Source of the DNA: Fimbriosthenelais zetlandica
Taxonomy: Eukaryota
Length of the DNA: 64,000 nt
Assembly: GCA_977030845.1 (NCBI GenBank)
Contig: OZ365112.1
Location: forward strand, 23,560,001 to 23,624,000
Direction of reading: 5' to 3'
Position numbers and translations under genes: made by a program. The notes below the pieces were generated by a model. It ran no database searches. It worked only from the letters and a program-made list of their open reading frames with translations, and had not been told where the DNA came from. This document shows, piece by piece, positions 1 through 64,000 of the stretch; position 1 is the first letter of the stretch; every line of letters starts with the position of its first letter.

Positions 1-161
1 TGGTGGGTATATGACATTTTTACTAAATGATTTTACAAAGAAATCCCCCTTATAAGTAACTCTTTCAGTGATCATATTTTGTTGATTTCAATATAGTTTT
101 CTTATCTTCATGGTACAAAACCTTCGGCATATTAAGTTTTCTATTCTTCTATTATTTTCAG

Positions 162-394
162 CCAATAATACGGGATGTGAGGTATGTATTCTTATTTATT
201 ATTCAAGTATAATTTGTCGATTATGATATCAATTATTTATATGCATTTATTTCCAATTTCTTACACTCTAGGGTGTATTATATAAAGATGTTTGCTACAG
301 AATATATCATACAGTCATCATTTGTAGGTGGATCCCCTTGGCTGCCCACAAGGCTCTTCCTGCATCCTTCTACCTGGACGACGTTCCCAATGTC
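162..394 (+). CDS. Follistatin-N (FOLN)/EGF-like 4-Cys module, join(162..181,328..394)
   Basis: ttttcag|20-nt exon|gtatgt, then ttgtag|67-nt exon|gtgagt. Reads NNTGCEVDPLGCPQGSSCILLPGRRSQC. Same exon layout as the 920-1193 module. Confidence 0.7.
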
Positions 395-3300
395 GTGAGT
401 ACATCTTTCACCTGTTTCCTCCTTGCTTTTTGAGATATTCTTCCTCAGATTTTGACTTGAAGGTCCAAGTGTGTTATCCTCAAAGGTTCATTTTTTTTCA
501 TACGGTCTGGTTTGGAGAGTAACACTACCCATGAAGAATGGGGTTTCATTTTCCCTGGGAGGGGAAAATGGAGACCTAATGTAATTAGAAGCTGATGGCA
601 AAATCTGTAATGGTCTTACACATTATATATTTAATTTGTACAGAGCTGAACCGCTGCCCCAGATACCGAGTTTCTTTCTGTCCTAACGGAGATGTCGACC
701 AGTGCACGGCAGACAATGCTTGTACTGGAGGTCAGGGATGCTGTTTTGACGGTTGTCGCCGAGTCTGCCAGGCCCTAACCACTAGTAAGTGTCCACTACA
801 TATTGCTTTATATTCCCTCATATATATGGTAAATGATAATGGTCAATGTATGTACTAATGTAGAGAATTGAGATCTTAATTGAGGAGCCGATGTTAATCA
901 TTTTTTTTTTAAATTTCAGCTATGACGCTAACATGTGATGTAAGTAAAGCTTTGTTTCTAAATGTTTTATTATTTAAATATGTAACGTTAATGTTCCTTA
1001 GAGACTCAGTGATGATGAAAGTTTGATTTTATGCAGTGCTTAAGGCAAATCCTCCATTCAATCTTTTTGTTGGAAGTGGATGAATTGATGATTTCATGAG
1101 TTGTTTTCTCCATTTAGCAAGTCACATGTGAACCCGGATTTGTGTGCCGTTTGGTAACTATGAACGGAGAGACCTTCCCTCGATGTGAAATGGGTAAGCA
1201 TGTCATTCTGATCTTCTTTATATAGTACTCGAGTTTTTCTTCTAAGAAGTTGCTACTCGTTTGTTTTTTTTGGGATCGCAATATCTTTTTTATAAACCCT
1301 ATAGTATTCGACAATTTTATATCAATTGCTTTAAAATATCCTTCAGGCTATTTACATCGAGATTTTTTTGATATACATATGTTTATGTCTTTGTATAAAT
1401 TAATATTTTCACTTTCAAAATGATTTACAGGGATGTAGCCTAAGTTATCAGGAAAAATGCTTGATTTACCTCTTTAGATTTATTGTAAGAGCTTACAATT
1501 TGACACTGAAATATTTTTCTTTTAAAGTTACATCCCTGGAATCATGTCATCACCTTGTTACTTGTCATAATATCATTTGTTCTTTTCTACCTCAGCTGGT
1601 AAGCTATGTGAATCCTTTGTCTGGGTAAAGTGAAGGGGTTGAAACTAGGCCCACACCAACCCAACCGATCGGCAGATGAAAATCATGTAAAAATCAGCCC
1701 GATCGCTCAATGATTTAGATTTAACCAGATCTGTAATTGTCAGAACTCGATTCCCCTATCTTTCAACTTCGCATCGGTCGGCTTGTTTAGTCTGGCGCCA
1801 AGAAATCAGTAAAATCTGGCGGTCGGTTGGCGTCTGTGGGCTTGGTGTGTGAGGACCTTTAGACGGTGTTATAAATTGACAGAAGCTGACATTTTACAAT
1901 GGCATGACATTCTAACTATTGGAGTAGATGGCTCCTTTAAGATGCTATACTTTGATACGGAGTACTTTTGTTTCTTAATCTCTCGGTGATGGTTCCTAGC
2001 TGACAGTGCAATGTAAAGCTGATGTTCTCTTACAGATTTGTTTTTCAAAAAACATTTGGAAATATAATGGGTCAAGTGTGTAATGCAAAATTATGTAAGC
2101 ATTGCTGAATTTTACATGCAAAACAAAATAATTCAAACTCATCGGCTTTACTGTGCAGCTGTCCCAAATCTGCAGGTTGCTAGGCAACTTGTAGATGGTA
2201 CGTAATTCAAATAGTATTATATAGAAATGAGCTGAATAGATCTTACCCATATGACTTGTAGTAATGGGGATGCAGGGAAGGTTGTTTTAGAGACATATAT
2301 TAAGTTGGTTTAGATAATCAGTTTTCATAAATGCTTGCAACTACGGTCAACCGTGGGAAGCTAAAAAAACATGTGTGCAAGTTGGGGTCAATAACATTGG
2401 CAATTTGCTCTTAACAAAGCTACAAACAGACATAACTTTATAAATCATCTTTATAATGAACATTAGCGTTAATCCCATTTAATCTGTAATTTACGTTTTA
2501 GATGATGTTGGTAAGAATCTGCAATGGTTTACCTAGATGCATGCATTCCAATCTGAAATCTTCCAAACCTAGGATTGAAAATATACCACGACTTGATAGC
2601 TAATAGTGATTAACATAATATAGCATGAAGATGTGTGATGGTGACTTTGTAACGTGATGGTTGGTAGTAGTGAAGTAGAAGGACTTTCTCCTTGACGACT
2701 TAGATCTGTAGAATCTTGTCAGGATCCTAGTCCGACAGAGACTGTCTGAATATCTGAAAGCATTAAAGGCTTGTGTGACGTCACTTTCCTCAATGCATGG
2801 TCAAGTCTGACTGTAGACAGCTAGGCCAACTCTTATCACTGATCTTGACTGTCAAATTTGACTTCTTGTCCTTTCCAAGCCATTTGCATTTCGAAGTAAC
2901 TCTTTTGAAAATGTTTGACTCCTATCCATACATTTTGCATATTTCTCCTCTCATTTACAATTCCTTCTGAATATTAGAACTTGAAATTCACTGCCTGGAG
3001 AATCTGTCCTGTCCTGTCCTAAAATCGAGCATGGTTTTAATGTCTGATATCACCATATTTCAATGACCCGCCATAATTATGACAACCTATATCTAATCCT
3101 GCCAAACAATCAGAATAAACTACAAAATGCCTTCTTCAGATGCAATAGGCAACATTTTCAATATAAAGTGTAATCGCTCAGCTAAGCACTAAATTTATCA
3201 CAAAAAAGTATTTTTCTTAGTTGAAATGGTTCTCATGTTATAAAATATACCGAGAATTGTTCTGCAGAAGCATTTGTTTTTTTTTCAGTAACAACATGTC

Positions 3301-6300
3301 CTTCACTGTCTGCCCCTGCCAATGGAGCAATCGCGTAAGTTGAATATATTTTTCATTTCATTTGACCAATTAGGACACGTAGCGGGTTCAAGCCAATTAT
3401 ACAAAACTTAATTATGTCTGCAAACTTGTATTCAGATCAACTACTGGAAGTAGCGTTGGAGCAACCATTACTTTTGAATGTGACCCAGGATTCACTCTCA
3501 TCGGGTGGAGAACAATCACTTGCCAAGAAAATAACTTCTGGTCTGGAGATCCTCCCGTCTGTCAAGGTTGGTAGCCAAAAATATTGAAGTTGTAAATAAG
3601 TCACATTTTTGTAAAACTTTGCACATTTCATTCTCGTTTTTTGCTGTAAACTGAGATGATGACCACCCGTTCCCTTTCCTTTTAAGCTGGATCATGTCCT
3701 GACAACCTGGGAACACCTCTCAACGGTTTCAAATCGTAAGAGCAACATTACACAGAAAAGAATCTGTCCTTATCAAATATTTCCCCACAAACTTGCTATT
3801 TGAGTTACTCATTTGTGCCACTTGCTCGTTCACTAATGTCTACATTTTCTTGATATCAGAGTCAATGGGCCTGTACCACCTGGTACTACCATCGTCTTCT
3901 CCTGTACCAATGGCTTCCAACTACAAGGACAAGCTATAATAACCTGTCTTTCTAACCTTGTCTACGATGCTCCACCTCCAATCTGTGTTCAGACCAGTGA
4001 GTATTGTCAAGGCATTAATTTAGGAAGAATTAGATGTATAGCCCTGCTGTCTCTTTCCCATTTTTCTGAATTTATTTAATTATCTTGTACATTACGTCTC
4101 CTGAATATGTTAATTATTCAGAAATAACATGCTTTTCATTTACCTACAGCCCGCAGATGTCCTGATATACTCGGCACGCCTGTGAATGGCTTCAGAACGT
4201 AAGTTCTATCCAACACCTCTTTATCTGGAAGTACTACAAATTCAGTCTTGCCATACCTTTCTATGTAGAATGCTCAAGTATATGTATTTATAAGTTAGGT
4301 AGGAGTTATATGCTGATTTCTGAATTTCAGTGTCAACGGGGACTTCTCACCAGGGACACAGATCCGCTTTGACTGTAACATTGGATTCCAGATCCAGGGA
4401 CAGTCAGTTGTCACCTGTCTGGACAGCCTGGCTTTTGATGCCCCAGCTCCCGTCTGCGTCCGTAAGTTTCTTCTGTATAGAAGATTTTGGTTTGCTATAA
4501 TATATAACTGCTTTTAGATGTAACGATAATATTTACTTTTAGTAGTTTTTTGAACTGCTTGTACATATTTTGCCTTTTTATTTGAAAGTGAATCTGCCAT
4601 TGCTGTCTCGTGCGTTAGTATTAGGTAATTTTGGTTAAAATCTTTCTTCCATTAAAGTTCAAACCGCCATCTGGCGTATTGTCGAACTGGTATATCTAGG
4701 TATATGTACATGTATCTCCATCCACCCATAGCCCCCAAAACCGCGATTCATGTTGAAGGCTTCTCATTATTATACCACCATGAGTTTGTGATTCCCTGAT
4801 ACTGAAGCATGCTTTTTGCCATCAGCTATTTCATGTGGGACCTTCCCACAATTGAGCGGTGTGGAGCCTAGTGACATTCCCACATCTCCTGACACTAACT
4901 ACCCAGCTACCTTCAACTTACGCTGTGCTGGATCAACAACCACCATCACAGTTTCCTGTGGCCTGGATGGCAATTGGACCACGTTTGGAATGTGTTTGGC
5001 AGGTGCATTGAAAAAAAGAGTCACTCATAATAAGAATTAAGCATACGAAGGACATCAGAAGTGTCTTGCTTCGTTCACCAGCAGCTTTCCATCTACTGGA
5101 GTGCTTAGATCCATTGTATTTCGCTGTATCAGAGGAATACCCTTCAACCGTCAATCACATATTTCACTTTGAACAGCCGCTTCCCTTTCCAGTCACTTCC
5201 GCCAAAGTTCCCCCAGTTGATCACCAATACCCCACCTTCTGCATTGCGTCAATTCACTTTCGAAATGTTACCTACCCTGGCATTGGTTTACGAAAATAAT
5301 CAGCTTCAATGCAATTCTACTCCATCTTTTGCTTATAAAATTTGCCCCTCGCTAATTTTTTTCAAACCATTGATTTTCAACTGCTTAAAAGCAACATAAT
5401 GCTAACCTGAAGGACATTTATTGCTTGTACAGAAACCCCCATAGAGCGAGTCTGTTATGAACCGCGGGATCCAGGTCCCTGTTTCCAGTTCCTGCTCCGT
5501 TACTTCCATAACAGTTTGAGTGGAACGTGCGAGAGGTTTGTCTATGGAGGTTGTCAAGGAAACAGTAACAGATTTGGGACGATTGAAGAATGTTTGAGAA
5601 TATGCAAAGGGACAGGTTAGACTTATAAGAGTGCATGATGAATCAGTGACCTATCAAGTGATTGCTGTTGAAGCCTTTGTGCTCTTGGGTTGGTTGGTTG
5701 GTTGGGTCCTCGTTTGGAAGGAGTTGGATGCATACTGGGTATGAAGGATGGAGTCAGGTTGGATGTTTGGTGGTGGAAGGAAGCATGTTACAAATCAATA
5801 TGCTATAAATGAATATTATCTAATTTTCTCCTTTCTGCCGCTCCTCTAATACAGGAATCTGACTTTCAGGGTTGCATTACCTATACAAGCTCTCCATCCC
5901 GGGGCGTCCATTTCACTCTGTCCACATACCTCCAAAATATTTACAGAAATAACATACCAATATATCTTTTGTCACCATTCTGAGCTTCCTCTGCATTCTT
6001 CTATCAACCTGGGACATGTTTCCAAAAGAAATGTATAACATTTTTCCATAATCCTCGAATGGACAAATGTCGTGCATGACACAGAGCCCTATACTTTTAA
6101 TAATTCTCCTACCTATTCACAGATGTCCATTTGGTAGTGGGTACTGGCAAATTGGTTAAGCCCAAAGTGATATTTTCTGTAACTCGATGATATTATTAAC
6201 TTTTGTCATGGTGTAAGATGATAACTATTTCCAAAGAATTATGAAAGAACAGAATTCTCTAGGTAATGTGCAAAGTTAAATAATATTCATTTATCTATTT

Positions 6301-57300: not shown

Positions 57301-60300
57301 GATGCAGCTCACACGTGTTTCAAAATGTCATTGATATTCAGAGTGGAGTTCGGGGAGACAAGCCCCCAAAACGACCAAACGATAATTTTTACATTCAGTT
57401 TTCAAGAAACCGATAGAATACCTTAAGAGACTAAGAGTTTTGAACCGTGACCTCTTTTATTTTGCTCTTGGTTGTAGGGAATTTGGTTTAAAAAGATAAT
57501 TTGAAGTCTAGCTTTAATAATTCATAGAATTATGTAAATTGCATACCTTTAAAATAATAAGTGAACTCTTCATTTTACAGCCATGCCCGACTGTCCAAAT
57601 ATCATTTCACCACCTGACGGAACTATGATGTAAGTAAGATTGTAAATCCATGGAAACCAGCATACTTACTGACATGATTTCTAAGAACATGTAAATTGAC
57701 TAATGTACTCACCGTTTCACCTATTCTCTTTCTAGTATCAACGGAACACTCCTCAGATTTTCCTGTAACCCTGGCTTCCGATTGTCTGGCCCACCAGAAA
57801 TCCTCTGTTCTGCAGGAATCTGGACGGACAATCCACCGACCTGTTTGCGTAAGTAAATGATTAAGCTTTGACTGCATGCTTCTGGTGTATGGTCACCATG
57901 CTTGTTTAGTTACCTTGATTTCATCATCTATATGCTCTGATTAAATCATGTATGTAACTAACATAGATTGTAAACATTTACATGACATAGTTTAAGTAGA
58001 TCCATTCACTATTAACATATCTAACATTGATTCACCTGATGTCAGCAACAATCTGCGAGGACTCGTTTCCCACCGTACCTAACGTAGTCAGAAGTACCAT
58101 ACCTGATTTTCCTAACCCACGAGCCGCTGGAGAACCGATCGTTCTCCAGTGTGAGACCGGATTCTCCCCTGAGACTGTTACTGTACAATGCACAGAAGAC
58201 GCAGAGTGGAACGTCAGCAGCCGCTGTGAAGGTTACCATTCTCACGTTTGATAATGTTTTACAAAACCTGATCAGAACAAATAGTGCAGTTGATATAGTA
58301 AATCTTCACAAACCATCAAAATTTAGGATGACCCATCACAATAATTATATTCATGATATTCCACCTATTGTGCCCTGGAAGTCGAAGCATCATTATTATT
58401 ATTTGAAGACATTTTGGACAACGTAGAGCATGAGATTTTCATGTTTCGTGTATCTCAATTCGGCCAGACTGTGTTAGAAAATTCACAAGCATGACACAAT
58501 TGATTATTAGTTGCATGTAATACATTGATGATTTTACAGTTCCAATGATAGGGCGTTGTTCCCTGCGCCTTGACCCCGGCACCTGCGATTTCGATGTGAC
58601 ACTTTATTATTACAATGTATTAACTGATCGGTGTGAGGAATTCGTGTATGGAGGTTGTGGGGGCAATGACAATCGCTTCAGCACAGAACTGGAATGTCAA
58701 AACACATGTGGTGGTGAAGGTGAACAAATTTTAAAGATATGATGGATACACTTGCTCAGGCTATAACAGTTGTACTTTGATGCGAAAGAACAAACTTTAA
58801 ATTTAATATTCGGTTAATATTCTATTAAAATAAATTTCCTGAGGAGGTGGTATCTTGATTCATCTTTCACTGTCGATTTGTGTTTCACATTTGATATAAT
58901 TCATCAGATTATTATCTAATCTGATCCTGCATGCTTTGTCTAATCCAACTCAGCTTTTCAGCTCGGCGATACACGCATATCTTAACATCTTTTCACATGT
59001 TCAAGTTGTACCTTGAACTATATTCATTAAAGATAAAATCGTCCAGATCCTAACCAAATGGAAATAGTTTTTTGTTAGCATGTTCTTACGATATAATTTA
59101 GGAAGAGAATGATTGCAATTGCTCATATCTTAGGTTTTATTGTGACCTTTCAGCTATTCCCGGGACCTGCATTGCCCCAGTTATTCAAGGAGAGGTAGAG
59201 CTGGCCAGGTAAGATTCTCCCTTTCTTTATAACAATCACTGCCTGTGGAACATTTCTGTGGAACATTCCTAAAGTAACACTATACAATGATAACATCCAT
59301 TCTGTCTTTCAGATTTGAAGGCAACCGCCTGATAATCACCTGCAGGCCTGGATATGCCCTGGATAGATCAGACTATGAAATCATCTGCCTCACTACAGGA
59401 AACGTGAACATTCTTAACGGCATTCTACCTGCTTGTCGAGGTATTCAGCCATAGTTTAGTAATTTTCAAACCCGGGGTTCCTTTTCATTGTATGTGTAAA
59501 ATAGTACGGATATGGCCTCTGCGTTTCACTGGCATAGAAACCTGAAGGTCCACCATTTAATGTTCCAAAAATACAGTTTCCCCTGTAACATGCTAAAACT
59601 GGAGGTGTCAATAATTGTGGGAGCCATATGTCATGATAGGGCACCTGAAAGAAGAGCCACAAATACAATAATGAACAGACAATACTTGATACCATGAGCA
59701 CTGTTGAAAGGATCAGTAGATTGAGATTGAGACAGGCCTTTTGGAAAGCATAACTATATGAATAACAATCCTATACAAACATGGTGAGGTGATTATTATA
59801 TTAAATGGTTTTTCAGCACTACATAATCCAAGTACATAAAGCCCCAGAGGTGGTACACACACACATTAACCTAAGTTTTGCATAATGAGACTGAATAGTA
59901 GACCGATATATCATGTTTAGAAGTTTAGACTGCTGGGCTTCATTTTAGACTGGAATTTGCTCTTTTATAGTATGAGATTATATACGTCGGTATGTAAAAT
60001 AAAAAAAACTGGGTAATTGTATATATATTTATAGCTACATGTGTATTTCTTGCCATACTGTGTGTTATGAGTAAAAAGAAGCTAATTGGGAATATACAGC
60101 AGGAAGCTAATTGGGAATATACTCATTTTTAATCATGGTAGTACTGTGTCAGAGTAAAGGAACAGTACTAGGGGTTAGTGGTGTTGTTGGGTATGGTAAG
60201 AGGTATGGGCTGCCTAGTTGGCAATGCTTACTAGGTGATCAAGGTGACTGGAGGACTCGGCCCCGGAGCAGCAGGGACATGGTCAGTAGTTACATGATGT

Positions 60301-63300
60301 CAGTTTACTGCCCAGTCTAACACTCACTGCTTCCAGAGCACTCAAACATGTACACTCCAACAGAACATCATAGTCCAGGACATCACCCAACACCAAAATG
60401 TAGCCAGTGAAATGGCAGGGCTAAAGTCAGCATAAAACAGAAAGCAAAATAGTCTACTCTGACCATAGGTTGTGATGTTCTTCAATGACTGGTCTGGTGA
60501 TATGTCAAAAAACAACTTTACATCTTCTCTGAGAATCACCTCTTCCAAGTGAATTATGCTATTGGGGCTATGATAGGTTTTTCTGTCTGTTTGAGGTAGC
60601 ACGTATTCACTGCTAGTGCTTGAACATCGTCTTGTCAAGTCTCTCTTTTGGTGTCTTATGATCATTGTGGCTTCTTCATTTTGTCAGAAGTTGACAGGAA
60701 AATACTGTCATCACATTTTTGCAGTCATGAGTGACACATCAATGCCATAGTATTGACACAATATTCAAAGCTTTACATGCAGACATGTACAAGGGTTTTT
60801 AGTCAACTCCACCACCTATAGGTATTGGGGAAAGCAATATTATGAGTTTGATATATTGGTATGATTTCTGAAAATGAAATTTATACAGTTGGTCTGAAAT
60901 AATTAGTATGTAACTTTGACTCCTTTCCACAATTCCAGCAATTGAAGCAGGCTGCAACTCCCGAATTGTAAATGGAGAATTAAGGTCAGTCTTAACACTT
61001 ATTTGCTATAACCACTATCTCCCAACTTCTCTAGCCCTGCTTCAATCATTAATGGTTTGATTTAAACATTCATTGCTTGACTTTCCAGTTCATCCAATAA
61101 TCCACCCCGACCAGGAGATTTGGCAAGGCTTGCCTGTGAACTTGGATATGACCCCAGCTCAACAGATTTCTTTAGATGTGTAAGTGACGGACGGTGGGAA
61201 AATGTGAACGACGGAAGAGCACCTGAATGCAGAGGTACAGTCTCAGGTTTTAACCAGTCTCTCAGTTTTTCTTTTTCCTGTAAGCTCTTTTCATTCTTTA
61301 AAACCAATAAGTTATTTAAGAACAATAAAGATTCACAGTCGTGTCATGTGATATCCAAGTTCATTAGCAGACTACACAGTACCTTGATATTCCTTTTTTC
61401 TCCATATCTTACCTACTCGTGTCATCATAAAACAACTTAACAATCACTAAACTTTACATTCCTTGTTTATTACCTATAATATTCTACATCCATTGTTCCT
61501 GTCTGATTAACATGATCTTTGCTTTCTTTAAATAATGAATTGTTCTTCTGTTAGTTCTTTTCCAGTTATTACTATGTCCCGAATTCATAATTTCCTTTAC
61601 TTCCTCTGGTTTTCACTAATTAGAGGTCCTAACATAGCACAAACCTAACAAACTTCTTATAAACAAAACTGGTGTACTCTACTTTGTAATGGTTGAAGAA
61701 TCTTAAAGATACATTTTCATATGGTAGTAATTGTGATGTTCAACTTGTTGTCAGGGACAGCATAGACCGTACAACAATATGAAGGTTTTATCAGGAAAAG
61801 TAAAGACTAACCTATGATGGGTCTCGTGGTTGGTCAGGGAATGCTTGGGTTGGGAAAGTGGCAGGAAACGCTAATCCTGCTGGGTCTGGTGTTGCTTTTT
61901 ATACAAGTGTGGACTCTGTGGTCTTATTGGATTTGGCAACTTAATGACATAGTTAGGTTAGATATAGAGCAATCCCAAAATTCCCCGTGCACATCCCTGC
62001 TGTAGGTATACATACGACATATAAAGTTTGCCATATTCTCCCTAATCATCACACCCATGCGCCTAGGTAAAAATGGCCGTGGAGATGTCAGTTTTTGCTT
62101 CCTATCGCCTGAGACTGGGCCCTGTCGGGACTATATCACACATTTCCACTACAACGAAATAACGGGCGTATGTGAGACATTTACTTACGGAGGCTGCGGA
62201 GGCAATGGAAACAACTTTTATAGCAAGATCGATTGTGAACAAACATGTAGCCAAACAGGTTGGGATTCTGCAAATAATTTGATAAATATGCACCTTTTGT
62301 AGTTAGCAAATTATTTTCTATTTCTTTTCATGTCCTAGATGATTTATAGAGCTACTAGGTTAAGTGTGCTATTGCCTTTCTCTTAGGCCGGATAGTCTTT
62401 ATCAACTGTTTTATCAAATTTTGTTTTTGTCATGTCAATGTGAGTCTATTTTAAAAAGGATTTGCTGCACCATCCATTAACCTCTGCTATGAGCCTCTCA
62501 ACCCTGGACCTTGTCAGGGCCTGGAAAACCGGTTCTACTTTAACATCCAAAGTAAAGAGTGTGAACCTTTCCTATATGGGGGCTGTGGAGGCAACCAGAA
62601 CAAGTTCCAGACAAAGAAAGATTGTGAAGATATTTGTGGAAGAGGTGCGAAATGAATTATTCCTCATGGTCCATCGCACAAGGAAGTAGACACGGGTTTC
62701 ATGGGTTGGCACAACAGTTACTGTCACGGACCATTTTTGTACCCCTTTTCTTCAATGTTGGCATAGATAGGAGGGCTTTGTCATTCCATGCAGGAGGGAC
62801 TGGATGCACTAGAATAACAGAAAGTGATATGAATGAGTACCTATCGTAGACCATGTATAGTGATAGTGATGAACAGTTAATAGTGTAGGGGTAGTTAATT
62901 AACATACTTTTCACGTAGGATTCCTCCTGGACCGAGGAGGTTTGCCATATTAGTTTAATTATCATCTACAGATTAAAGGTTAGGGTGGCGAGTAGACATA
63001 TACATCTTGCTTTTATGCTTGTAAACATATTAAACATCGTCTGCTTCTTGTTCAATCATTGAAACAGACTATTAACAGAGAACAAACCCAGCGAAATCTT
63101 TATGACATATGACGTGTTGGCACCTTGTCAAACTAAGGGCTATTGCATGATTTCATAACTGAGACCTTTACAGGCAAGGGTTTCTTCTCTTTCTATGAGT
63201 CTATCCAATTGTGTGTTGCGGTTTACAGATTTGTTCTTGTTTTCTGTCCCTTGTATATCTGTTTGGAACAGGTTCGATCAGTACATGTTAAGTCTTGTTT

Positions 63301-63721
63301 CGTTGCACTTTGAAGTGACAGATTAAGCTTGATATAGGCATTGGTCTTGATATCAAATACATTGGTTAGATTAGCAGGAATCTTTACTAAAATCTCTGGT
63401 GGAGGTCCTTTATGTACAAGTATCGGTGATGTTTCGCAGGTCTGTTAAACTCTTTGAATGCATAATTATCTACATTGATCTAAATACTCTGGTCTGCAAA
63501 AAGAAGTAGATAAATGTGCCTTGATCTTTTCATAAAAGACATATTGGTTGTTTTCATTGTTATCACACTTTGGTTATATTGATGGGAATCCTAGCATTGC
63601 TGGCTGTTTCAGACAATGAACCTGACCCCTCACAAGTCAACTGTCCCTGTCCAGGAGCGACTGTAAGAGCAGATGAAGGATTATGTCCTGATGTCTGGTC
63701 TCCTACTAATGGATGTAGATG
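162..63721 (+). CDS. Giant multi-exon secreted/extracellular-type mosaic protein (FOLN-like, WAP, ~109 sushi/CCP-like, 4 Kunitz), partial at both ends
   Basis: About 140 exons flanked by pyrimidine-tract AG and GT. Every module begins and ends in phase 1, and split modules have a matching internal phase-2 intron, so the joined CDS (about 20.7 kb) stays open. Cys/Trp patterns of sushi, Kunitz and WAP are visible in translation. No ATG/signal exon or terminal exon in the window. Confidence 0.9.
644..784 (+). CDS. WAP (four-disulfide core) domain exon
   Basis: 141-nt phase 1-1 exon, gtacag|...|gtaagt. ELNRCPRYRVSFCPNGDVDQCTADNACTGGQGCCFDGCRRVCQALTT has 8 Cys with the CC-x3-C-x3-C WAP ending. 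Confidence 0.9.
920..1193 (+). CDS. FOLN-like module, join(920..939,1118..1193)
   Basis: atttcag|20 nt|gtaagt and catttag|76 nt|gtaagc. Reads MTLTCDQVTCEPGFVCRLVTMNGETFPRCEM, matching the FOLN pattern C-x2-V-x-C-x2-G-x2-C-xn-P-x-C. Confidence 0.8.
1596..1598 (+). other. Candidate 3-nt micro-exon (CTG)
   Basis: tttgttcttttctacctcag|ctg|gtaagc: strong acceptor and donor around 3 nt, frame-preserving, inside a 2.1-kb intron. Confidence 0.35.
1648..1843. mobile_element. Degenerate MITE-like element with imperfect inverted repeats
   Basis: Left ...gcccaca...ccaaccgatcggcagat (1648-1677) versus reverse complement of 1814-1843 ...gcccaca...ccaaccgaccgccagat. GC-richer than the flanks. No TSD identified. 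Confidence 0.3.
3289..3566 (+). CDS. Canonical sushi/CCP, join(3289..3334,3436..3566)
   Basis: TTCPSLSAPANGAI / STTGSSVGATITFECDPGFTLIGWRTITCQENNFWSGDPPVCQ. Internal phase-2 intron after NG-x-x. Absent from the + ORF track. Confidence 0.9.
3687..3996 (+). CDS. Canonical sushi/CCP, join(3687..3735,3860..3996)
   Basis: GSCPDNLGTPLNGFK / VNGPVPPGTTIVFSCTNGFQLQGQAIITCLSNLVYDAPPPICVQT. GT-AG sites. Confidence 0.9.
4150..4461 (+). CDS. Canonical sushi/CCP, join(4150..4198,4331..4461)
   Basis: RRCPDILGTPVNGFR / VNGDFSPGTQIRFDCNIGFQIQGQSVVTCLDSLAFDAPAPVCV. Confidence 0.9.
4826..5002 (+). CDS. Single-exon divergent sushi-like module
   Basis: 177 nt, phase 1-1. ISCGTFPQLSGVEPSDIPTSPDTNYPATFNLRCAGSTTTITVSCGLDGNWTTFGMCLA. 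Donor gtgcat is weak. Confidence 0.8.
5433..5615 (+). CDS. Kunitz/BPTI domain 1 (P1 = Phe)
   Basis: 183 nt, gtacag|...|gttaga. TPIERVCYEPRDPGPCFQFLLRYFHNSLSGTCERFVYGGCQGNSNRFGTIEECLRICKGT: 6 Cys, FVYGGC-x-GN-x-N-x-F motif. Missing from the + ORF track. Confidence 0.95.
6307..6603 (+). CDS. Canonical sushi/CCP, join(6307..6352,6470..6603)
   Basis: VTCPEIGPPINGMR / INGNGGPGTVIRFQCNTNFQLSGAPEIQCLDNGQWNQNPPVCIG. Confidence 0.9.
7154..11333 (+). CDS. Array block 1: 10 single-exon sushi-like cassettes alternating type A (5 Cys) and type B (4 Cys)
   Basis: Exons A 7154-7330, B 7530-7712, A 8041-8217, B 8335-8523, A 8622-8798, B 8963-9142, A 9685-9861, B 10283-10462, A 10763-10939, B 11154-11333. 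All lengths are multiples of 3, phase 1-1, AG/GT flanked. Motif CGP(L/I)P-x-(V/I/L)PN-x4-WP-x-NP-x-T-x2-GS-x-Y-x3-C-x12-C-x2-3-G-x-W-x5-C. Confidence 0.9.
9313..9628 (+). pseudogene. Fossil exon pair (truncated type A plus frameshifted type B)
   Basis: 9313-9380 reads IPCGPIPAFPNTAQPWPFNPN behind AA instead of AG and is then truncated. 9449-9628 resembles type B (CGPLRNVNN...DNWP...VRCLSGY...gttgttcacacacaa|gttag) with stops and frameshifts. Confidence 0.75.
11598..11790 (+). pseudogene. Highly decayed A-5'/B-3' exon remnants
   Basis: ctctcAA|tc ttc cac tgt ggc tca ttg tct gta ttg ttt aat gct gives CGSLSVLFNAFQHLP (cf. CGSIPVLPNAGQPWP). Downstream ITSTCFLCKRQIGNK (cf. ITATCFLTGWQIDNQ). Confidence 0.55.
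11984..22076 (+). CDS. Array block 2: 23 near-identical 177-nt type-A cassettes (E and D subtypes alternating)
   Basis: Exon starts (each 177 nt): 11984, 12410E, 12814D', 13578E, 13859D, 14276E, 14702D, 15111E, 15506D, 15863E, 16289D, 16646E, 17038D', 17879E, 18297D, 18654E, 19060D', 19903E, 20321D, 20678E, 21084D'/D, 21472E, 21900D. E = IECGIIPVLPNAGQPWPSNPITRVGSTYTVPCVTSCTTNTVTVTCLQSGQWQFSGQCT. D = IDCGPIPVLPNAAQPWPSNPLTRCGSTYTVPCLTGCSTDSVTVTCLESGQWQFNGECR. Confidence 0.9.
13221..13341 (+). pseudogene. Decayed type-B pseudo-exon, copy 1
   Basis: cctctag|tt atg gaa agt gga cca... first Cys changed tgt>agt, +1 frameshift giving an early TGA, central deletion, ends ...atagacaacaatgcaca without a GT donor. 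Confidence 0.8.
17452..17580 (+). pseudogene. Decayed type-B pseudo-exon, copy 2
   Basis: cctctag|tc ata gaa agt gga cca cca cca gta tca aaa tgt agc tga. Same lesions as 13221. Confidence 0.8.
19475..19603 (+). pseudogene. Decayed type-B pseudo-exon, copy 3
   Basis: Essentially identical to 17452-17580 at offset 2023. Confidence 0.8.
22400..31600. repeat. Six-exon higher-order repeat, period about 2.57-2.70 kb, about 3.5 copies
   Basis: The VTDCGPIPDLPNAARPW exon recurs at 22483, 25181, 27850, 30415. The cccctgatag-acceptor exon recurs at 23321, 25963, 28640. The cctccccttag-acceptor exon recurs at 24327, 27031, 29646. Confidence 0.85.
22483..31984 (+). CDS. Array block 3: 22 cassettes strictly alternating type A (177 nt, 5 Cys) and type B (180 nt, 4 Cys)
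   Basis: A starts: 22483, 23321, 24327, 25181, 25963, 27031, 27850, 28640, 29646, 30415, 31393. B starts: 22945, 23647, 24725, 25587, 26293, 27441, 28263, 28982, 30036, 30897, 31805. B consensus MDCGPLPIVPNVADNWPFNPDTQFGSTYTVRCLSGFSPSTITATCLLTGWQIDNQCTRR. Confidence 0.9.
32171..35672 (+). CDS. Array block 4: 8 diverged A/B cassettes
   Basis: A 32171-32347, B 32617-32796, A 32920-33099, B 33233-33415, A 33648-33830, A 33982-34164, B 34253-34450, B 35496-35672. All phase 1-1 with the WP motif. Confidence 0.85.
32541..32607. repeat. 30-bp direct duplication in intron
   Basis: tttacttttgttctgaaatgtccgttcctt at 32541-32570 and 32578-32607, immediately upstream of the 32617 acceptor. Confidence 0.9.
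36641..36697. repeat. 19-bp minisatellite, 3 copies
   Basis: tctgag(a/t)ttatcaacttct-like unit repeated three times (first copy tctgagaatatcaacttct). Confidence 0.9.
36861..41444 (+). CDS. Array block 5: 11 Asn/Pro-rich short-loop sushi-like cassettes (dimer repeat, period about 0.83-0.89 kb)
   Basis: 174-nt exons at 36861, 37484, 37925, 38369, 38790, 39235, 39653, 40075, 40521, 40909, and a 183-nt exon 41262-41444. IRCGARPSISNAVPNTENPQNPEPFVGSQYTVRCVDGSQVTVVCGSGGNWQAQGTCR alternates with IQCGQFPNIPNTIPNSRNPPNPGFTSGSQYTETCRQGSLVSVFCDQSGQWQRNGDCA. Most are absent from the ORF track. Confidence 0.9.
41730..41921 (+). CDS. Single-exon divergent sushi-like module (5 Cys)
   Basis: gatgtag|192 nt|gttaga. 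RGCPPFPEVPYVVLEDLPDTPSQHIGCQYALRCLYQSGTTTTVIVRCSEDAEWDISGFCPPPP. Confidence 0.85.
42667..42843 (+). CDS. Single-exon divergent sushi-like module
   Basis: ISCGPFPALPPGAVSWPTDPDPSSTFIWIQCQPGYLPDYISISCNLETRNWLLDGKCT. Confidence 0.85.
43034..43350 (+). CDS. Canonical sushi, join(43034..43079,43220..43350)
   Basis: ATCPDVPQIANGNR / IEGPRTPGTRVIFMCLSGFRLVGEMVVFCQEGFTYSAQFPTCI. Confidence 0.85.
43544..43717 (+). CDS. Single-exon divergent sushi-like module
   Basis: FDCGPPPPLENLVEGWIDGSVTSYLASYSFRCREGFFPIYITLTCREQGWDVSDTCT. Confidence 0.85.
43891..44179 (+). CDS. Canonical sushi, join(43891..43936,44049..44179)
   Basis: KTCPPVVDFEHGTF / MSHDGSPGTVITFTCDTGYVLNGASQIRCLSDFTYDVPVPSCL. Confidence 0.85.
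44327..44503 (+). CDS. Single-exon divergent sushi-like module
   Basis: IDCGDLPERPAGVINWPDQLDSRYPAVYWVECQPGWFPSYVRISCTLQMVWVREGTCR. Confidence 0.85.
45078..45465 (+). CDS. Canonical sushi, join(45078..45120,45335..45465)
   Basis: RCTEPEAPVNGVK / VSGDLSPGTTVRFFCNLGYVLSGRPILTCQDNSQFDFSTPACE. Confidence 0.85.
45585..45770 (+). CDS. Single-exon divergent sushi-like module
   Basis: VDCGRLPDPASLNLMGQWPQLYDTSYQAVQRLRCRRPDFGEQTITFRCTEAAIWQPSGQCR. Confidence 0.85.
46085..46433 (+). CDS. Canonical sushi, join(46085..46136,46291..46433)
   Basis: IRTWCVDIQPPTDGQL / INNDVNGVLFPGAYVTFTCAEGTKLIGADRITCQDNFFYDYPPPTCQ. Confidence 0.8.
46603..46782 (+). CDS. Single-exon divergent sushi-like module
   Basis: IDCGSNVPPLPQGIGDRPTITSTLFMAFYWIPCREGFEPPYMGLFCNRDGVWEQQSPCT. 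Confidence 0.85.
47384..47704 (+). CDS. Canonical sushi, join(47384..47438,47571..47704)
   Basis: IGSARCPTPPQIANGYY / IIGSDLTANTQVRYQCNPGFISMGSSVITCQSNLQFDRFPPTCM. Confidence 0.85.
47901..48314 (+). CDS. Canonical sushi, join(47901..47952,48175..48314)
   Basis: ASRRCERLDPPQNGQS / ISRVQGQLQPGDNITFFCHPGFSLLGEPVLVCLISNEFNHNPPICT. Confidence 0.85.
48474..48650 (+). CDS. Single-exon divergent sushi-like module
   Basis: TACQALPPLPFGVASWPNIMDRGPSAFYWVPCMDGFTPPYIQLACLASGNWEVRGECQ. Confidence 0.85.
48790..49089 (+). CDS. Canonical sushi, join(48790..48841,48959..49089)
   Basis: PTNRCPQNSALANGYT / IIGDLEVGSSMFFFCNNGYTLQGRSELVCEIDLQWDYPAPTCQ. Confidence 0.85.
49289..49471 (+). CDS. Single-exon divergent sushi-like module
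   Basis: SDCGPLPDPFTLNLRGSWPPGAPTTYLQNYTLPCETNFLPPEVTATCTATQGWIYNDFCR. Confidence 0.85.
50088..50516 (+). CDS. Canonical sushi, join(50088..50142,50386..50516)
   Basis: TQGTRCDTPPRPVDGDR / IDGDLTPGTMVTFTCNAGFTLVGERLLQCQQNGRFNSPAPTCV. Confidence 0.85.
50605..50784 (+). CDS. Single-exon divergent sushi-like module
   Basis: TDCTQPPNLLVFGVDPSESVTMTRYPVFMWLRCAPNTMLDFVSLTCLSDGSWSVSSQCS. Confidence 0.85.
51256..51597 (+). CDS. Canonical sushi, join(51256..51307,51467..51597)
   Basis: APSQCPELRRPERGYM / INGGRLIGTTVTFSCEDGFILTGSDNLMCTSNNIWDRETPTCE. Confidence 0.85.
51756..51803 (+). CDS. Candidate 48-nt linker exon with a lone Cys
   Basis: ttatcag|tg act gct gcc agt ggc agt ggc cct gtc cct gag ctc atg tgt aaa g|gtaaat = TAASGSGPVPELMCK, phase 1-1. 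The downstream intron is only 57 nt. Confidence 0.5.
51861..52161 (+). CDS. Canonical sushi, join(51861..51915,52046..52161)
   Basis: SSGMACSSILNPNNGFR / VIGRNISFNCNEGYRLNGPSFILCLPNGQYTQQLPTCE. Confidence 0.85.
52313..52489 (+). CDS. Single-exon divergent sushi-like module
   Basis: AVCGDLPPLPAGVVSWPEIDRRQSPAFYWLTCRPGSNKDYVPLRCSMDGFWITPEDCG. Confidence 0.85.
52964..53398 (+). CDS. Canonical sushi, join(52964..53009,53283..53398)
   Basis: VQCPAINQIRNGYA / ISETETTFTCFQGFSIVGPARIVCQRDGTWSGPVPTCE. Confidence 0.85.
53534..53901 (+). CDS. Canonical sushi, join(53534..53588,53768..53901)
   Basis: TSTPQCVDLLDPINGFI / REGDTNVGSKITFFCNRGFRLTGNGNLTCQSNMEWDQPTPRCVP. Confidence 0.85.
54585..54779 (+). 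CDS. Single-exon divergent sushi-like module
   Basis: ATVTDCGPLPNLDGTRGQWNPGQGTSSGSRHTIQCQNGLAPPVVTAFCSQDGQWQYIDGICRAG. Confidence 0.85.
55811..56161 (+). CDS. Canonical sushi, join(55811..55856,56025..56161)
   Basis: SRCQNPGGIRNGRI / RISNEDFTVGTVVTYICDRGYNLQGDRSIVCRDNLQFTPNPPVCS. Tandem CAGAAG acceptor (56025 or 56028). Confidence 0.85.
56588..56764 (+). CDS. Single-exon divergent sushi-like module
   Basis: SSTGCGALPFIPNIRISDLPTNPTGTETLNVRCERGFSPSTITINCIGGRWTPSQQCI. Confidence 0.85.
57066..57245 (+). CDS. Single-exon divergent sushi-like module
   Basis: IDCGNQIPDTLSLGGGLEDGARTSYGSTHSLPCPDGFTPLRITISCSERATWESNQNCT. Confidence 0.85.
57581..57848 (+). CDS. Canonical sushi, join(57581..57629,57736..57848)
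   Basis: MPDCPNIISPPDGTM / INGTLLRFSCNPGFRLSGPPEILCSAGIWTDNPPTCL. Confidence 0.85.
58046..58231 (+). CDS. Single-exon divergent sushi-like module
   Basis: TICEDSFPTVPNVVRSTIPDFPNPRAAGEPIVLQCETGFSPETVTVQCTEDAEWNVSSRCE. Confidence 0.85.
58540..58719 (+). CDS. Kunitz/BPTI domain 2 (P1 = Asp)
   Basis: PMIGRCSLRLDPGTCDFDVTLYYYNVLTDRCEEFVYGGCGGNDNRFSTELECQNTCGGE. Confidence 0.95.
59154..59440 (+). CDS. Divergent two-exon sushi, join(59154..59208,59313..59440)
   Basis: IPGTCIAPVIQGEVELA / FEGNRLIITCRPGYALDRSDYEIICLTTGNVNILNGILPACR. 4 Cys, conserved Trp lost. Confidence 0.75.
60078..60122. repeat. 20-bp direct repeat in intron
   Basis: gaagctaattgggaatatac at 60078-60097 and 60103-60122. Confidence 0.85.
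60939..61234 (+). CDS. Two-exon sushi, join(60939..60984,61089..61234)
   Basis: IEAGCNSRIVNGEL / SSNNPPRPGDLARLACELGYDPSSTDFFRCVSDGRWENVNDGRAPECR. Confidence 0.85.
62067..62258 (+). CDS. Kunitz/BPTI domain 3 (P1 = Arg)
   Basis: KNGRGDVSFCFLSPETGPCRDYITHFHYNEITGVCETFTYGGCGGNGNNFYSKIDCEQTCSQT. Confidence 0.95.
62459..62644 (+). CDS. Kunitz/BPTI domain 4 (P1 = Gln)
   Basis: FAAPSINLCYEPLNPGPCQGLENRFYFNIQSKECEPFLYGGCGGNQNKFQTKKDCEDICGR. The ORF track shows only another frame. Confidence 0.95.
63613..63721 (+). CDS. Cys-rich linker plus first half of a further split sushi (gene continues beyond the window)
   Basis: gtttcag|...NEPDPSQVNCPCPGATVRADEGLCPDVWSPTNGCR(W)|gttagc, phase 1 to 2. CPDVWSPTNGCR aligns with CPEIGPPINGMR. 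An internal gtaaga at 63663 is an alternative donor. Confidence 0.65.
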
Positions 63722-64000
63722 GTTAGCTTCTCTGTTAAAGTACCCTCCACAATCATCAAATATATCTCCCTATAATATTACTTCCTCATTTGAGTAATAT
63801 ATCATATTCAGCACCTGCAAATGTCTTTCAACATCGATAACAACTGAACCTTCTTATGTAAAATAACTTTATCTCAGTTCAGAAGGGAATAGAGCTCTAC
63901 GCATGCAAAATATCCAGCATATCACATAATTAAATAAATTAATTTGTGTCTATTCCTTAATCTCCTCAGTAGCTGATACATAGATAAATATCGACCATGT

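What the first reader, a model, noticed from the sequence alone, without database searches (positions are those of the whole stretch)
162..63721. Giant sushi-array protein (over 100 CCP-like modules) carrying WAP, FOLN and four Kunitz domains
Seen: about 140 exons join in frame into roughly 6,900 aa with about 109 sushi-like modules, and the gene is open at both ends. Established: well-known CCP-rich proteins are far shorter (factor H 20 modules, common CR1 allele 30, SVEP1 34), and multi-Kunitz matrix proteins such as papilin lack a sushi array. I do not recognise this architecture. Inference: a very long extracellular filament with protease-inhibitor modules near both ends, e.g. a protease-resistant matrix, adhesive or mucosal-defence scaffold.
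Basis: partly seen in the sequence, partly recalled or inferred. Interest (0 to 1): 0.9.

Follow-up and report, generated by a model that had tools for sequence, protein, structure and literature searches.

The report
Giant 109-sushi secreted protein gene
The whole window is one gene for a secreted protein of about 6,850 residues. It is a chain of 109 sushi (CCP) beads with protease-inhibitor domains near both ends. That is about twice the longest sushi array my library search returned, but it is built entirely from known domain types.

Summary
I rebuilt the gene independently: 137 exons on the + strand, all with AG/GT splice sites, give 20,547 coding bases and 6,848 residues with no internal stop. 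It contains 109 sushi-type modules. Eighty-nine are a divergent single-exon subtype and 20 are canonical two-exon sushi. It also has one WAP and four Kunitz domains. The FOLN call is not confirmed, since Pfam gave no hit.

The divergent subtype is a true CCP fold. C, C, C, W and C are invariant, 44 of 89 modules match Pfam Sushi, and an AlphaFold model (pLDDT 91.5) matches C4BP, CD46, DAF and beta2-GPI CCPs.

I find a likely start (ATG 110 with a signal-peptide-like leader) and a likely stop (TGA 62653, just after Kunitz 4).

Duplicated modules show dN/dS of about 0.42, and repeat blocks are at most 95.6% identical, so the array is neither a pseudogene nor an assembly artefact.

In a search of 1.84 billion representative proteins, none of the best 150 matches has Kunitz or WAP. 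The longest array found has 56 modules (a clam protein). Expression and function remain untested.

This is a new variant of a known kind. It is moderately interesting, not 0.9.

The parts
110..181 (+). Exon 1. ATG at 110 is the first ATG after an in-frame TGA at 83-85. It encodes a 24-residue signal-peptide-like leader and ends at a GAG|GTATGT donor (phase 0). A TATAAG lies at 50-55.
   Evidence: Sequence read directly. Translation and hydrophobicity, with a 9-residue Kyte-Doolittle peak of 2.4.
328..394 (+). Exon 2 (phase 0 to 1). A small Cys-rich hairpin (C-x5-C-x9-C) ahead of the WAP domain.
   Evidence: No Pfam hit.
644..784 (+). WAP four-disulfide-core domain. One exon, phase 1-1, eight Cys.
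   Evidence: Pfam PF00095, E 6.7e-7, 29.9 bits against a cut-off of 20.8. Splice sites.
1122..1193 (+). Phase 1-1.
   Evidence: Exon candidates. No Pfam hit at E <= 1. The FOLN resemblance is at pattern level only.
3289..4461 (+). Three canonical sushi domains, each in two exons: 3289-3334 + 3436-3566, 3687-3735 + 3860-3996, and 4150-4198 + 4331-4461.
   Evidence: Pfam Sushi 3e-12 and 20 of 20 second halves.
4826..5002 (+). First single-exon ('type A') divergent sushi module.
5445..5615 (+). Kunitz domain 1. The residue after the second Cys (P1) is Phe.
   Evidence: Pfam PF00014, 7.4e-20. Splice sites.
6307..6603 (+). Canonical two-exon sushi 4 (6307-6352 + 6470-6603).
7154..42843 (+). Uninterrupted run of 76 type A exons (174-198 nt each, phase 1-1). 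It is built from tandem units of about 0.8-0.9 kb (2 exons), 2.0 kb and 2.7 kb (6 exons).
43034..58231 (+). Mixed region with 14 canonical two-exon sushi domains interleaved with 12 diverged type A exons.
58552..58713 (+). Kunitz domain 2 (P1 Asp).
   Evidence: Pfam 1.4e-18. Splice candidates.
59154..61234 (+). Canonical sushi 19 (59154-59208 + 59313-59440) and sushi 20 (60939-60984 + 61089-61234).
   Evidence: Pfam Sushi 0.0052 and 1e-4.
62067..62258 (+). Kunitz domain 3 (P1 Arg).
   Evidence: Pfam 1.6e-18. PDB sequence search: best match is the annelid tri-Kunitz inhibitor SmCI (1.3e-32), and it aligns with TFPI domain 2.
62459..62655 (+). Kunitz domain 4 (P1 Gln). Its frame runs into TGA at 62653-62655, the probable stop. 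ATTAAA lies at 62972 and 63029.
   Evidence: Pfam 6.2e-21..
63613..63721 (+). It is reachable only through a weak donor at 62644. It may instead belong to a next gene whose ORF holds an ATG at 63582 followed by a hydrophobic leader.
   Evidence: No Pfam hit.

Best explanation
The window holds one complete, intact gene of about 62.5 kb with 137 exons. It encodes a secreted protein of about 6,850 residues and about 735 kDa, with pI 4.6.

Domain order: signal peptide, small Cys hairpin, WAP, small Cys hairpin, 3 sushi, 1 divergent sushi, Kunitz, 1 sushi, 76 divergent sushi in a row, 26 further sushi of both kinds interleaved, Kunitz, 2 sushi, Kunitz, Kunitz, stop.

Each sushi (CCP) module is a disulfide-locked beta-sandwich bead. 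With linkers of mostly 4-6 residues, 109 beads would make a semi-flexible thread roughly 0.4 micrometre long. That length is inferred from about 3.5-4 nm per CCP in solved complement regulators.

The array grew by repeated tandem duplication of 2- to 6-exon units of phase 1-1 exons and is held under purifying selection.

Inferred, not shown: the thread is an extracellular scaffold or surface-coat component (mucus, cuticle, tube or egg coat). Its WAP and Kunitz heads would locally block serine proteases. Kunitz 3 has P1 Arg, which predicts a trypsin-like target, and Kunitz 1 has P1 Phe, which predicts a chymotrypsin-like target. Kunitz 2 and 4 have P1 Asp and Gln and may bind rather than inhibit. 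The 36 modules with an odd Cys count could let threads cross-link through disulfides.
For: - Gene structure: module HMM hits fall only on the + strand. All 136 introns are AG/GT and phase-compatible, and there is no stop in 6,848 codons.
- Domains: Pfam WAP and 4 Kunitz. Sushi for 20 of 20 canonical and 44 of 89 divergent modules.
- Fold of the divergent subtype: invariant C, C, C, W, C in all 89. AlphaFold pLDDT 91.5. Foldseek top hits are C4BP, CD46, DAF, beta2-GPI, MASP and factor H CCPs, with TM 0.6-0.77 and probability up to 0.99. The ten best protein-language-model matches are all Sushi.
- Secretion: ATG 110 with a hydrophobic leader. No hydrophobic run of 16 or more residues in the model.
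- Selection: dN/dS about 0.42, below 1 in 98.5% of 403 pairs. There is no clustering of replacements.
- Not an assembly artefact: there are no Ns, and the most similar blocks are 95.6% identical over 3.4 kb.
- One gene: no internal ATG-plus-leader exon with a phase-1 donor was found in any intron. No other Pfam or Rfam feature occurs on either strand.
Against: - No transcript or protein evidence could be obtained. Neither library search turned up this genome's proteins or transcripts.
- All array exons are symmetric phase 1-1, so any subset could be skipped without breaking the frame. The full-length product may therefore be rare.
- The 3' end is ambiguous: either a stop at 62653, or a weak donor at 62644 leading to 63613.
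- The signal peptide was judged by eye and hydrophobicity only.
- The functional role is pure inference. Kunitz P1 Asp and Gln are not classic inhibitor residues.
- Foldseek E-values are weak (0.17 and up) because the domain is only 58 residues long.
Confidence: 0.6

Rival explanations
1. The locus is a cassette-exon library. The 89 symmetric type A exons are used combinatorially, through regulated exon skipping, to make many shorter isoforms of different length or surface. The 6,848-residue product is then the exception.
For: - Every array exon is phase 1-1 with a length that is a multiple of 3.
- 83 of 89 type A donors carry a pyrimidine at intron +3 (GTCAG or GTTAG), whereas 43 of 47 other exons of the same gene have GTAAG or GTGAG.
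- The bias survives clustering of the type A exons into 25 diverged groups: 19 are Y and 6 are R. Fisher's exact test against the 47 non-type A exons (4 Y, 43 R) gives p = 8e-9.
- From general knowledge, +3 pyrimidine donors are weaker and are enriched at alternative exons.
Against: - Type A exons end in AG|, and they keep +4 A and +5 G, so the donors may be adequate. The +3 bias may be partly compensation.
- Replacement changes are not concentrated in a variable loop, and dN/dS is below 1 throughout. That does not look like a diversity-generating repertoire.
- There are no RNA data.
Confidence: 0.2
2. It is an overgrown member of the LEV-9/Hasp kind of protein (N-terminal WAP followed by a CCP chain). 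It would act as an extracellular organiser that clusters receptors at synapses or cell contacts, rather than as a bulk matrix protein.
For: The N-terminal order of signal peptide, WAP, then CCPs matches LEV-9 (one WAP and eight CCPs; the source does not give their order) and Hasp (one WAP followed by up to 17 CCPs), as described in PMC9083331. WAP and CCP are confirmed here.
Against: - LEV-9 and Hasp have no Kunitz domains and 6-13 times fewer CCPs.
- Orthology could not be tested, because no LEV-9 or Hasp sequence was available to the tools.
- A 0.4 micrometre thread is far longer than a synaptic cleft is wide.
Confidence: 0.1
3. It is an innate-immune recognition or complement-regulator-like molecule. 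The CCP array would bind microbial or self surfaces, and the inhibitor domains would neutralise pathogen proteases.
For: - CCP arrays are the binding units of complement regulators, which were the top structural matches.
- Sushi gene families are reported as expanded and fast-evolving in tubeworms (PMC8789280).
- Other notes on this genome list many sushi-bearing receptor genes (unchecked).
Against: - There is no sign of diversifying selection in the modules.
- Near-identical repeats add length rather than new specificities.
- No complement-type partner domains (CUB, serine protease, TEP) occur in the gene.
Confidence: 0.1
4. The window holds several shorter genes, or a decaying unexpressed array.
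For: - No expression data are available.
- A few decayed module fragments lie in introns, at 9319-9378, 9458-9511 and 13223-13289.
- Five introns exceed 1 kb.
Against: - There are zero stops or frameshifts in 20.5 kb of coding sequence, and 136 intact introns.
- dN/dS is about 0.42.
- There is only one leader-bearing first exon and one terminal stop.
- No internal start exon was found.
- The decayed relics show what unconstrained copies look like here, and the 89 used modules look nothing like them.
Confidence: 0.05

Closest known systems
Complement-control-protein (sushi/CCP/SCR) array proteins: factor H (20 modules), CR1 (30), SVEP1/polydom (34), CSMD1-3
   Same: Beads-on-a-string of roughly 60-residue CCP modules with the C-C-C-W-C signature and short linkers. 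Mostly one exon per module in phase 1-1, with some modules split into two exons. Growth by tandem exon duplication.
   Different: There are 109 modules, three to five times more. Eighty-nine belong to a divergent subtype with a P-N-x4-W-P-x-N-P-x-T loop, and only half of them reach Pfam Sushi at E <= 0.01. The companion domains are WAP and Kunitz rather than CUB, EGF, pentraxin or a membrane anchor.
Mercenaria mercenaria uncharacterized protein LOC128558234 (XP_053403087.1, 3,897 aa)
   Same: It is the best library match to the module profile, with 56 matched modules and 1,392 bits. It is a giant lophotrochozoan sushi array made of near-identical alternating modules.
   Different: Modules share only about 24% identity over a three-module tblastn match with the window. 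The modules are rich in N-x-S/T sites. Its non-sushi C-terminal region carries a GLCGNFNG motif that I read as VWD-like, which I did not test. A pattern screen found no Kunitz or WAP. It has about half as many modules. It is not an orthologue.
LEV-9 (C. elegans) and Hasp (Drosophila)
   Same: Secreted proteins with one WAP domain and a CCP chain (PMC9083331). In Hasp the WAP precedes the CCPs. This gene's N-terminal region has the same order.
   Different: They have 8 and up to 17 CCPs and no Kunitz domains, and they act at synapses. Homology of the WAP and first CCPs was not tested.
WAP-plus-Kunitz proteins: WFIKKN1/2, eppin. Multi-Kunitz matrix proteins: papilin, collagen VI alpha3
   Same: Several protease-inhibitor folds combined on one extracellular protein. 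Kunitz 3 matches the WFIKKN1 Kunitz domain in the PDB sequence search (1.1e-12).
   Different: By general knowledge, none of these carries a sushi array. Here the inhibitor domains make up only about 4% of the protein.
SmCI, the tri-Kunitz inhibitor of the annelid Sabellastarte magnifica (PDB 4bd9)
   Same: It is the best solved-structure sequence match of Kunitz 3, at 1.3e-32 summed over three domains.
   Different: It is a 165-residue free inhibitor with no CCP modules.

Membership tests
Sushi / CCP / SCR domain (Pfam PF00084) | Four invariant Cys plus a Trp between Cys3 and Cys4, in a module of about 60 residues | tested here: met
   C3, C33, C44, W50 and C56 are invariant in all 89 type A modules (A2). 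The canonical two-exon modules keep the three second-half Cys in 20 of 20, with W in 8 of 20 and Y or F in 11 (A3).
Sushi / CCP / SCR domain (Pfam PF00084) | Match to the family profile | tested here: met
   20 of 20 canonical second halves match at E <= 0.01, best 4.4e-12. 44 of 89 type A modules match at E <= 0.01, best 8e-7. The rest fall below threshold, with HRM (the same fold clan) as the only other recurrent hit.
Sushi / CCP / SCR domain (Pfam PF00084) | CCP beta-sandwich fold | tested here: met
   AlphaFold model of module 8624-8797: pLDDT 91.5. Foldseek PDB hits are almost all CCP domains, TM 0.6-0.77, probability up to 0.99, E 0.17 or weaker because the domain is small.
Kunitz/BPTI (PF00014) | Six Cys with BPTI spacing and a profile match above the cut-off | tested here: met
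   Four domains, 67-75 bits against a cut-off of 21. Six Cys in each by direct reading. Kunitz 3 aligns to BPTI, TFPI and SmCI.
Kunitz/BPTI (PF00014) | Serine-protease inhibition through the P1 residue | not testable with these tools
   The P1 residues read from the sequence are Phe, Asp, Arg and Gln. Activity needs an enzyme assay.
WAP four-disulfide core (PF00095) | Eight Cys and a profile match above the cut-off | tested here: met
   29.9 bits against a cut-off of 20.8, E 6.7e-7. Eight Cys in exon 644-784.
FOLN, follistatin N-terminal domain-like (PF09289) | Profile match | tested here: not met
   No Pfam family at E <= 1 for 1124-1192 or 328-393. Only a loose C-x5-C-x9-12-C pattern is present. 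The pieces are 22-23 residues long, so the test has little power.
LEV-9 / Hasp | Secreted, with an N-terminal WAP followed by a CCP chain | tested here: met
   Domain order. The family description is from PMC9083331.
LEV-9 / Hasp | Orthology of the WAP and CCP sequences, no other domain types, and synaptic localisation | not tested
   No LEV-9 or Hasp sequence could be obtained. The four Kunitz domains are a difference in architecture.
Regulators of complement activation | Binding or regulation of C3b/C4b-like proteins | not testable with these tools
   The only link is fold similarity.

The most novel reading that the evidence does not exclude
The 89 symmetric type A exons carry a conserved, atypical GTYAG donor class that the other exons of the same gene lack. 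They could form a regulated cassette system that lets the animal tune the length or make-up of a lysine-free, thiol-studded extracellular thread. That would be a splice-programmable structural or recognition fibre with no described counterpart among CCP proteins.
Probability: 0.12. Interest if true: 0.7.

Novelty: new variant of a known kind. Interest (0 to 1): 0.42.

Why it matters
If it is expressed as modelled, this is by far the longest CCP array I could find. It has 109 modules, against 56 in the best library match and 20-34 in the textbook proteins. It is also the first I could find that joins a sushi array to WAP and Kunitz inhibitor domains.

It gives a clean natural example of how phase 1-1 exon duplication can inflate a protein to about 735 kDa while selection keeps every copy intact.

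Three side features suggest a specialised extracellular chemistry worth testing: near-absence of Lys and His, one spare Cys in 36 modules, and a private splice-donor class. It does not open a new category of system, and nothing here bears on a long-standing question.

Tried and rejected
- **Tandem Repeats Finder:** it found nothing, because the units exceed its 500-nt period limit. A self-BLAST was used instead.
- **Kunitz regex:** my first pattern was wrong and found nothing. It was corrected. The two corrected pattern hits (P0078, P0101) proved to be Sushi plus EGF proteins with no Kunitz.
- **Finding this species' own transcripts or protein fragments:** I queried a stop-free ORF of 164 aa with the search restricted to its module. 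No candidate shared three 5-residue words. The representative search gave no module above about 44% identity. Expression could therefore not be checked.
- **Literature:** three searches for sushi + Kunitz + WAP combinations returned nothing describing such a protein. A fourth search retrieved the LEV-9/Hasp review. The sea-anemone matrisome paper and the Riftia genome paper mention sushi genes only in general terms.
- **Assembly inflation:** rejected. There are no Ns, and block identity is at most 95.6%.
- **Pseudogene array:** rejected on intact frames and dN/dS.
- **Diversifying selection in a variable loop:** looked for and not seen.
- **Other features in the window:** the longest other ORFs on both strands and an Rfam scan gave nothing.
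- **Organism:** not established. Earlier notes call it an annelid (unchecked). My module hits are mostly bivalve, and the best Kunitz PDB hit is from an annelid. 'Lophotrochozoan' is the most I would say.

Full report
**What is there**

The window has no Ns and about 39% G+C. Stop-free frames on the + strand are full of Cys-rich pieces of about 60 residues. I built an HMM from 80 regex-seeded pieces. It finds 94 hits on the + strand and none on the - strand.

Every full hit lies between an AG with a pyrimidine tract and a GT. Both are in the phase that leaves two bases of a split codon at the start of the exon and one at the end. This gives 89 exons of 171-198 nt. All lengths are multiples of three and all are phase 1-1. 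I call these type A.

**The canonical sushi domains**

A second set of pieces matches Pfam Sushi only from about profile position 16-22 onwards. Their best acceptors leave one base of a split codon. A short exon of the form C-x2-P-x4-6-N-G, with a GTAAGT or GTGAG donor in phase 2, lies 100-250 nt upstream of each. These are 20 canonical sushi domains split into two exons.

**The other domains**

Pfam confirms one WAP (644-784; 29.9 bits against a cut-off of 20.8). It also confirms four Kunitz domains at 5445-5615, 58552-58713, 62067-62258 and 62459-62644, with E 1.6e-18 to 6.2e-21.

I treat them as unclassified Cys hairpins.

**The joined model**

The 135 exons join into 20,397 nt and 6,798 aa with no stop and no non-AG/GT junction.

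Upstream, the ATG at 110 is the first ATG after an in-frame TGA. It opens MVQNLRHIKFSILLLFSANNTGCE and ends at GAG|GTATGT. A TATAAG lies 55-60 nt upstream of the ATG. Exon 2 (328-394) links it in phase to the WAP exon.

Downstream, the Kunitz 4 frame runs into TGA at 62653, four residues after the last Cys. ATTAAA lies at 62972 and 63029.

The full model has 137 exons and 6,848 aa, with a mass of 735 kDa and pI 4.6. Its ORF also holds an ATG at 63582 followed by a hydrophobic leader, so it may start a next gene. The gene is therefore probably complete in the window, not open at both ends.

The domain order is: leader, hairpin, WAP, hairpin, 3 sushi, 1 type A, Kunitz, 1 sushi, 76 type A, then 14 sushi interleaved with 12 type A, Kunitz, 2 sushi, Kunitz, Kunitz.

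**Is type A really sushi?**

All 89 modules keep C, C, C, W and C at fixed columns. At E <= 0.01, 44 of 89 match Pfam Sushi, and the only other recurrent match is HRM, which has a sushi-like fold.

An AlphaFold model of module 8624-8797, made with 40 paralogues, has pLDDT 91.5. Its Foldseek matches in the PDB are C4BP, CD46, DAF, beta2-glycoprotein I, C1s/MASP and factor H CCP modules. TM is 0.6-0.77 and probability up to 0.99. E-values are 0.17 or weaker, as expected for 58 residues. Protein-language-model neighbours are all Sushi clusters.

Type A is therefore a divergent CCP subtype. It is marked by a P-N-x4-W-P-x-N-P-x-T-x2-G loop after the first Cys.

**Real, used, and one gene?**

Self-comparison shows tandem units of about 0.8-0.9, 2.0 and 2.7 kb. 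Their whole-unit identity, introns included, is 82-95.6%. Exons of a subtype are 96-100% identical. The copies are distinguishable, so collapse or inflation by the assembler is unlikely.

Nei-Gojobori dN/dS is about 0.42 and is below 1 in 98.5% of 403 pairs. The pairs are not independent. Replacement and silent variants are spread evenly along the module, with no hot loop.

Only three short decayed module fragments lie in introns. No intron holds an ATG-plus-leader exon with a good phase-1 donor. Other ORFs and an Rfam scan give nothing.

These results argue for one constrained gene. No RNA evidence could be had. The protein libraries hold nothing from this genome.

**Relatives**

I searched a profile of 40 diverse type A modules against 1.84 billion representative proteins. 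It found 754 proteins at E <= 0.001.

- The best is a 3,897-aa uncharacterised protein of the clam Mercenaria, with 56 matched modules. It shares only about 24% identity over a three-module match with the window. Its non-sushi C-terminal region has a GLCGNFNG motif that I read as VWD-like, which I did not test.
- The others I looked up that carry a species label are also bivalve proteins, and several more are auto-named 'SVEP1-like'.
- None of the best 150 has a Kunitz or WAP pattern. The two pattern hits are Sushi plus EGF proteins.
- The closest single module (44% identity) is an exon on a 1.1-kb environmental contig. It carries the same P-N-A-x-P-W-P-x-N loop.

An N-terminal WAP followed by CCPs is the known design of Hasp. 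LEV-9 also combines one WAP with eight CCPs (PMC9083331). Kunitz 3's best solved relative is SmCI, a tri-Kunitz inhibitor from an annelid. Earlier notes of this scan call the genome an annelid. I did not verify that.

**How it probably works**

Shown:
- A leader and no membrane-type hydrophobic run in the model.
- 109 disulfide-locked beads with linkers mostly of 4 or 6 residues.
- Intact Cys frameworks in all inhibitor domains.

Inferred:
- A thread of about 0.4 micrometre, at 3.5-4 nm per CCP.
- Inhibitor heads at both ends. P1 Arg (Kunitz 3) predicts a trypsin-type target and P1 Phe (Kunitz 1) a chymotrypsin-type target. P1 Asp and Gln (Kunitz 2 and 4) are atypical.
- An extracellular scaffold or coat is the most economical reading, because near-identical repeats add length rather than specificity and there is no diversifying selection.

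The rivals are listed with their tests: cassette-exon isoforms, a LEV-9/Hasp-like organiser, an immune binder, and several genes or a dead locus.

**Unexplained features**

1. Lys and His depletion. Lys is 17 and His 15 of 6,848 residues. There are three Lys in 5,198 residues of type A modules, and five in 1,164 residues of the old canonical modules, which are only 30-40% identical to each other. Base composition predicts 3.5% Lys. The median of 131 sushi-rich library proteins is 3.2%, although two of those also have none.
2. Spare cysteines. Thirty-six type A modules have an odd Cys count. The extra Cys replaces the aromatic residue after C2-x-x-G.
3. A private donor class. 83 of 89 type A donors are GTYAG, while 43 of 47 other donors in the same gene are GTRAG. 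The bias holds across 25 diverged clusters (19 Y, 6 R); compared with the non-type A exons (4 Y, 43 R), Fisher's exact test gives p = 8e-9. Compensation by the strong exonic AG| explains part of this but not the direction.

**Verdict**

FOLN and 'open at both ends' fall, and the function remains inference.

This is a new, extreme variant of a known kind of protein. It deserves a moderate score rather than 0.9.

Noticed in passing
window, all 89 type A exon donors (e.g. 13755, 8799, 42844): 83 of 89 type A exons have a pyrimidine at intron position +3 (GTCAG x50, GTTAG x24). By contrast, 43 of 47 other exons of the same gene have GTAAG or GTGAG. The bias persists across 25 diverged exon clusters (19 Y, 6 R); against the non-type A exons (4 Y, 43 R), Fisher's exact test gives p = 8e-9.
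   Followed up: partly
window 110-62655 (spliced product): The product is almost free of lysine and histidine: 17 Lys and 15 His in 6,848 residues, about 0.2% each. Base composition predicts about 3.5% Lys, and related sushi-rich proteins have a median of 3.2%. The depletion also holds in the old, mutually diverged modules, so it is not just a founder effect of one amplified module.
   Followed up: partly
window 7154-32347 mainly: 36 of 89 type A modules have an odd number of Cys (33 with five, 3 with seven). The extra Cys replaces the conserved aromatic residue after C2-x-x-G. In 11984-22076 the pattern alternates between 5 and 6 or 7 Cys per module.
   Followed up: partly
window 63525-63794 (+): This ORF has an ATG at 63582 followed by a short hydrophobic leader (MGILALLAVS) and a Cys-rich stretch. 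It may be the first coding exon of a neighbouring gene rather than a continuation of the giant gene. It has no Pfam hit.
   Followed up: partly
window 9319-9378, 9458-9511, 13223-13289: Short decayed fragments of type A modules lie inside introns. They are relics of lost copies within the array.
   Followed up: partly
window 50-55: A TATAAG lies 55-60 nt upstream of the proposed start codon at 110. This is compatible with a promoter just inside the window.
   Followed up: no
L001 279-722 (ENA ERZ23495071 scaffold_209338; protein P0140): A 1.1-kb contig from an environmental assembly carries a single exon with the same P-N-A-x-P-W-P-x-N-x-D-T-Q-x-G loop as type A modules, at 44% identity. The subtype therefore exists in at least one other, unidentified organism.
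   Followed up: partly
window, 20 canonical second-half sushi exons (A3): Only 8 of the 20 canonical sushi domains keep the hallmark Trp. Eleven have Tyr or Phe, and one has Val. All 89 divergent type A modules keep the Trp.
   Followed up: no
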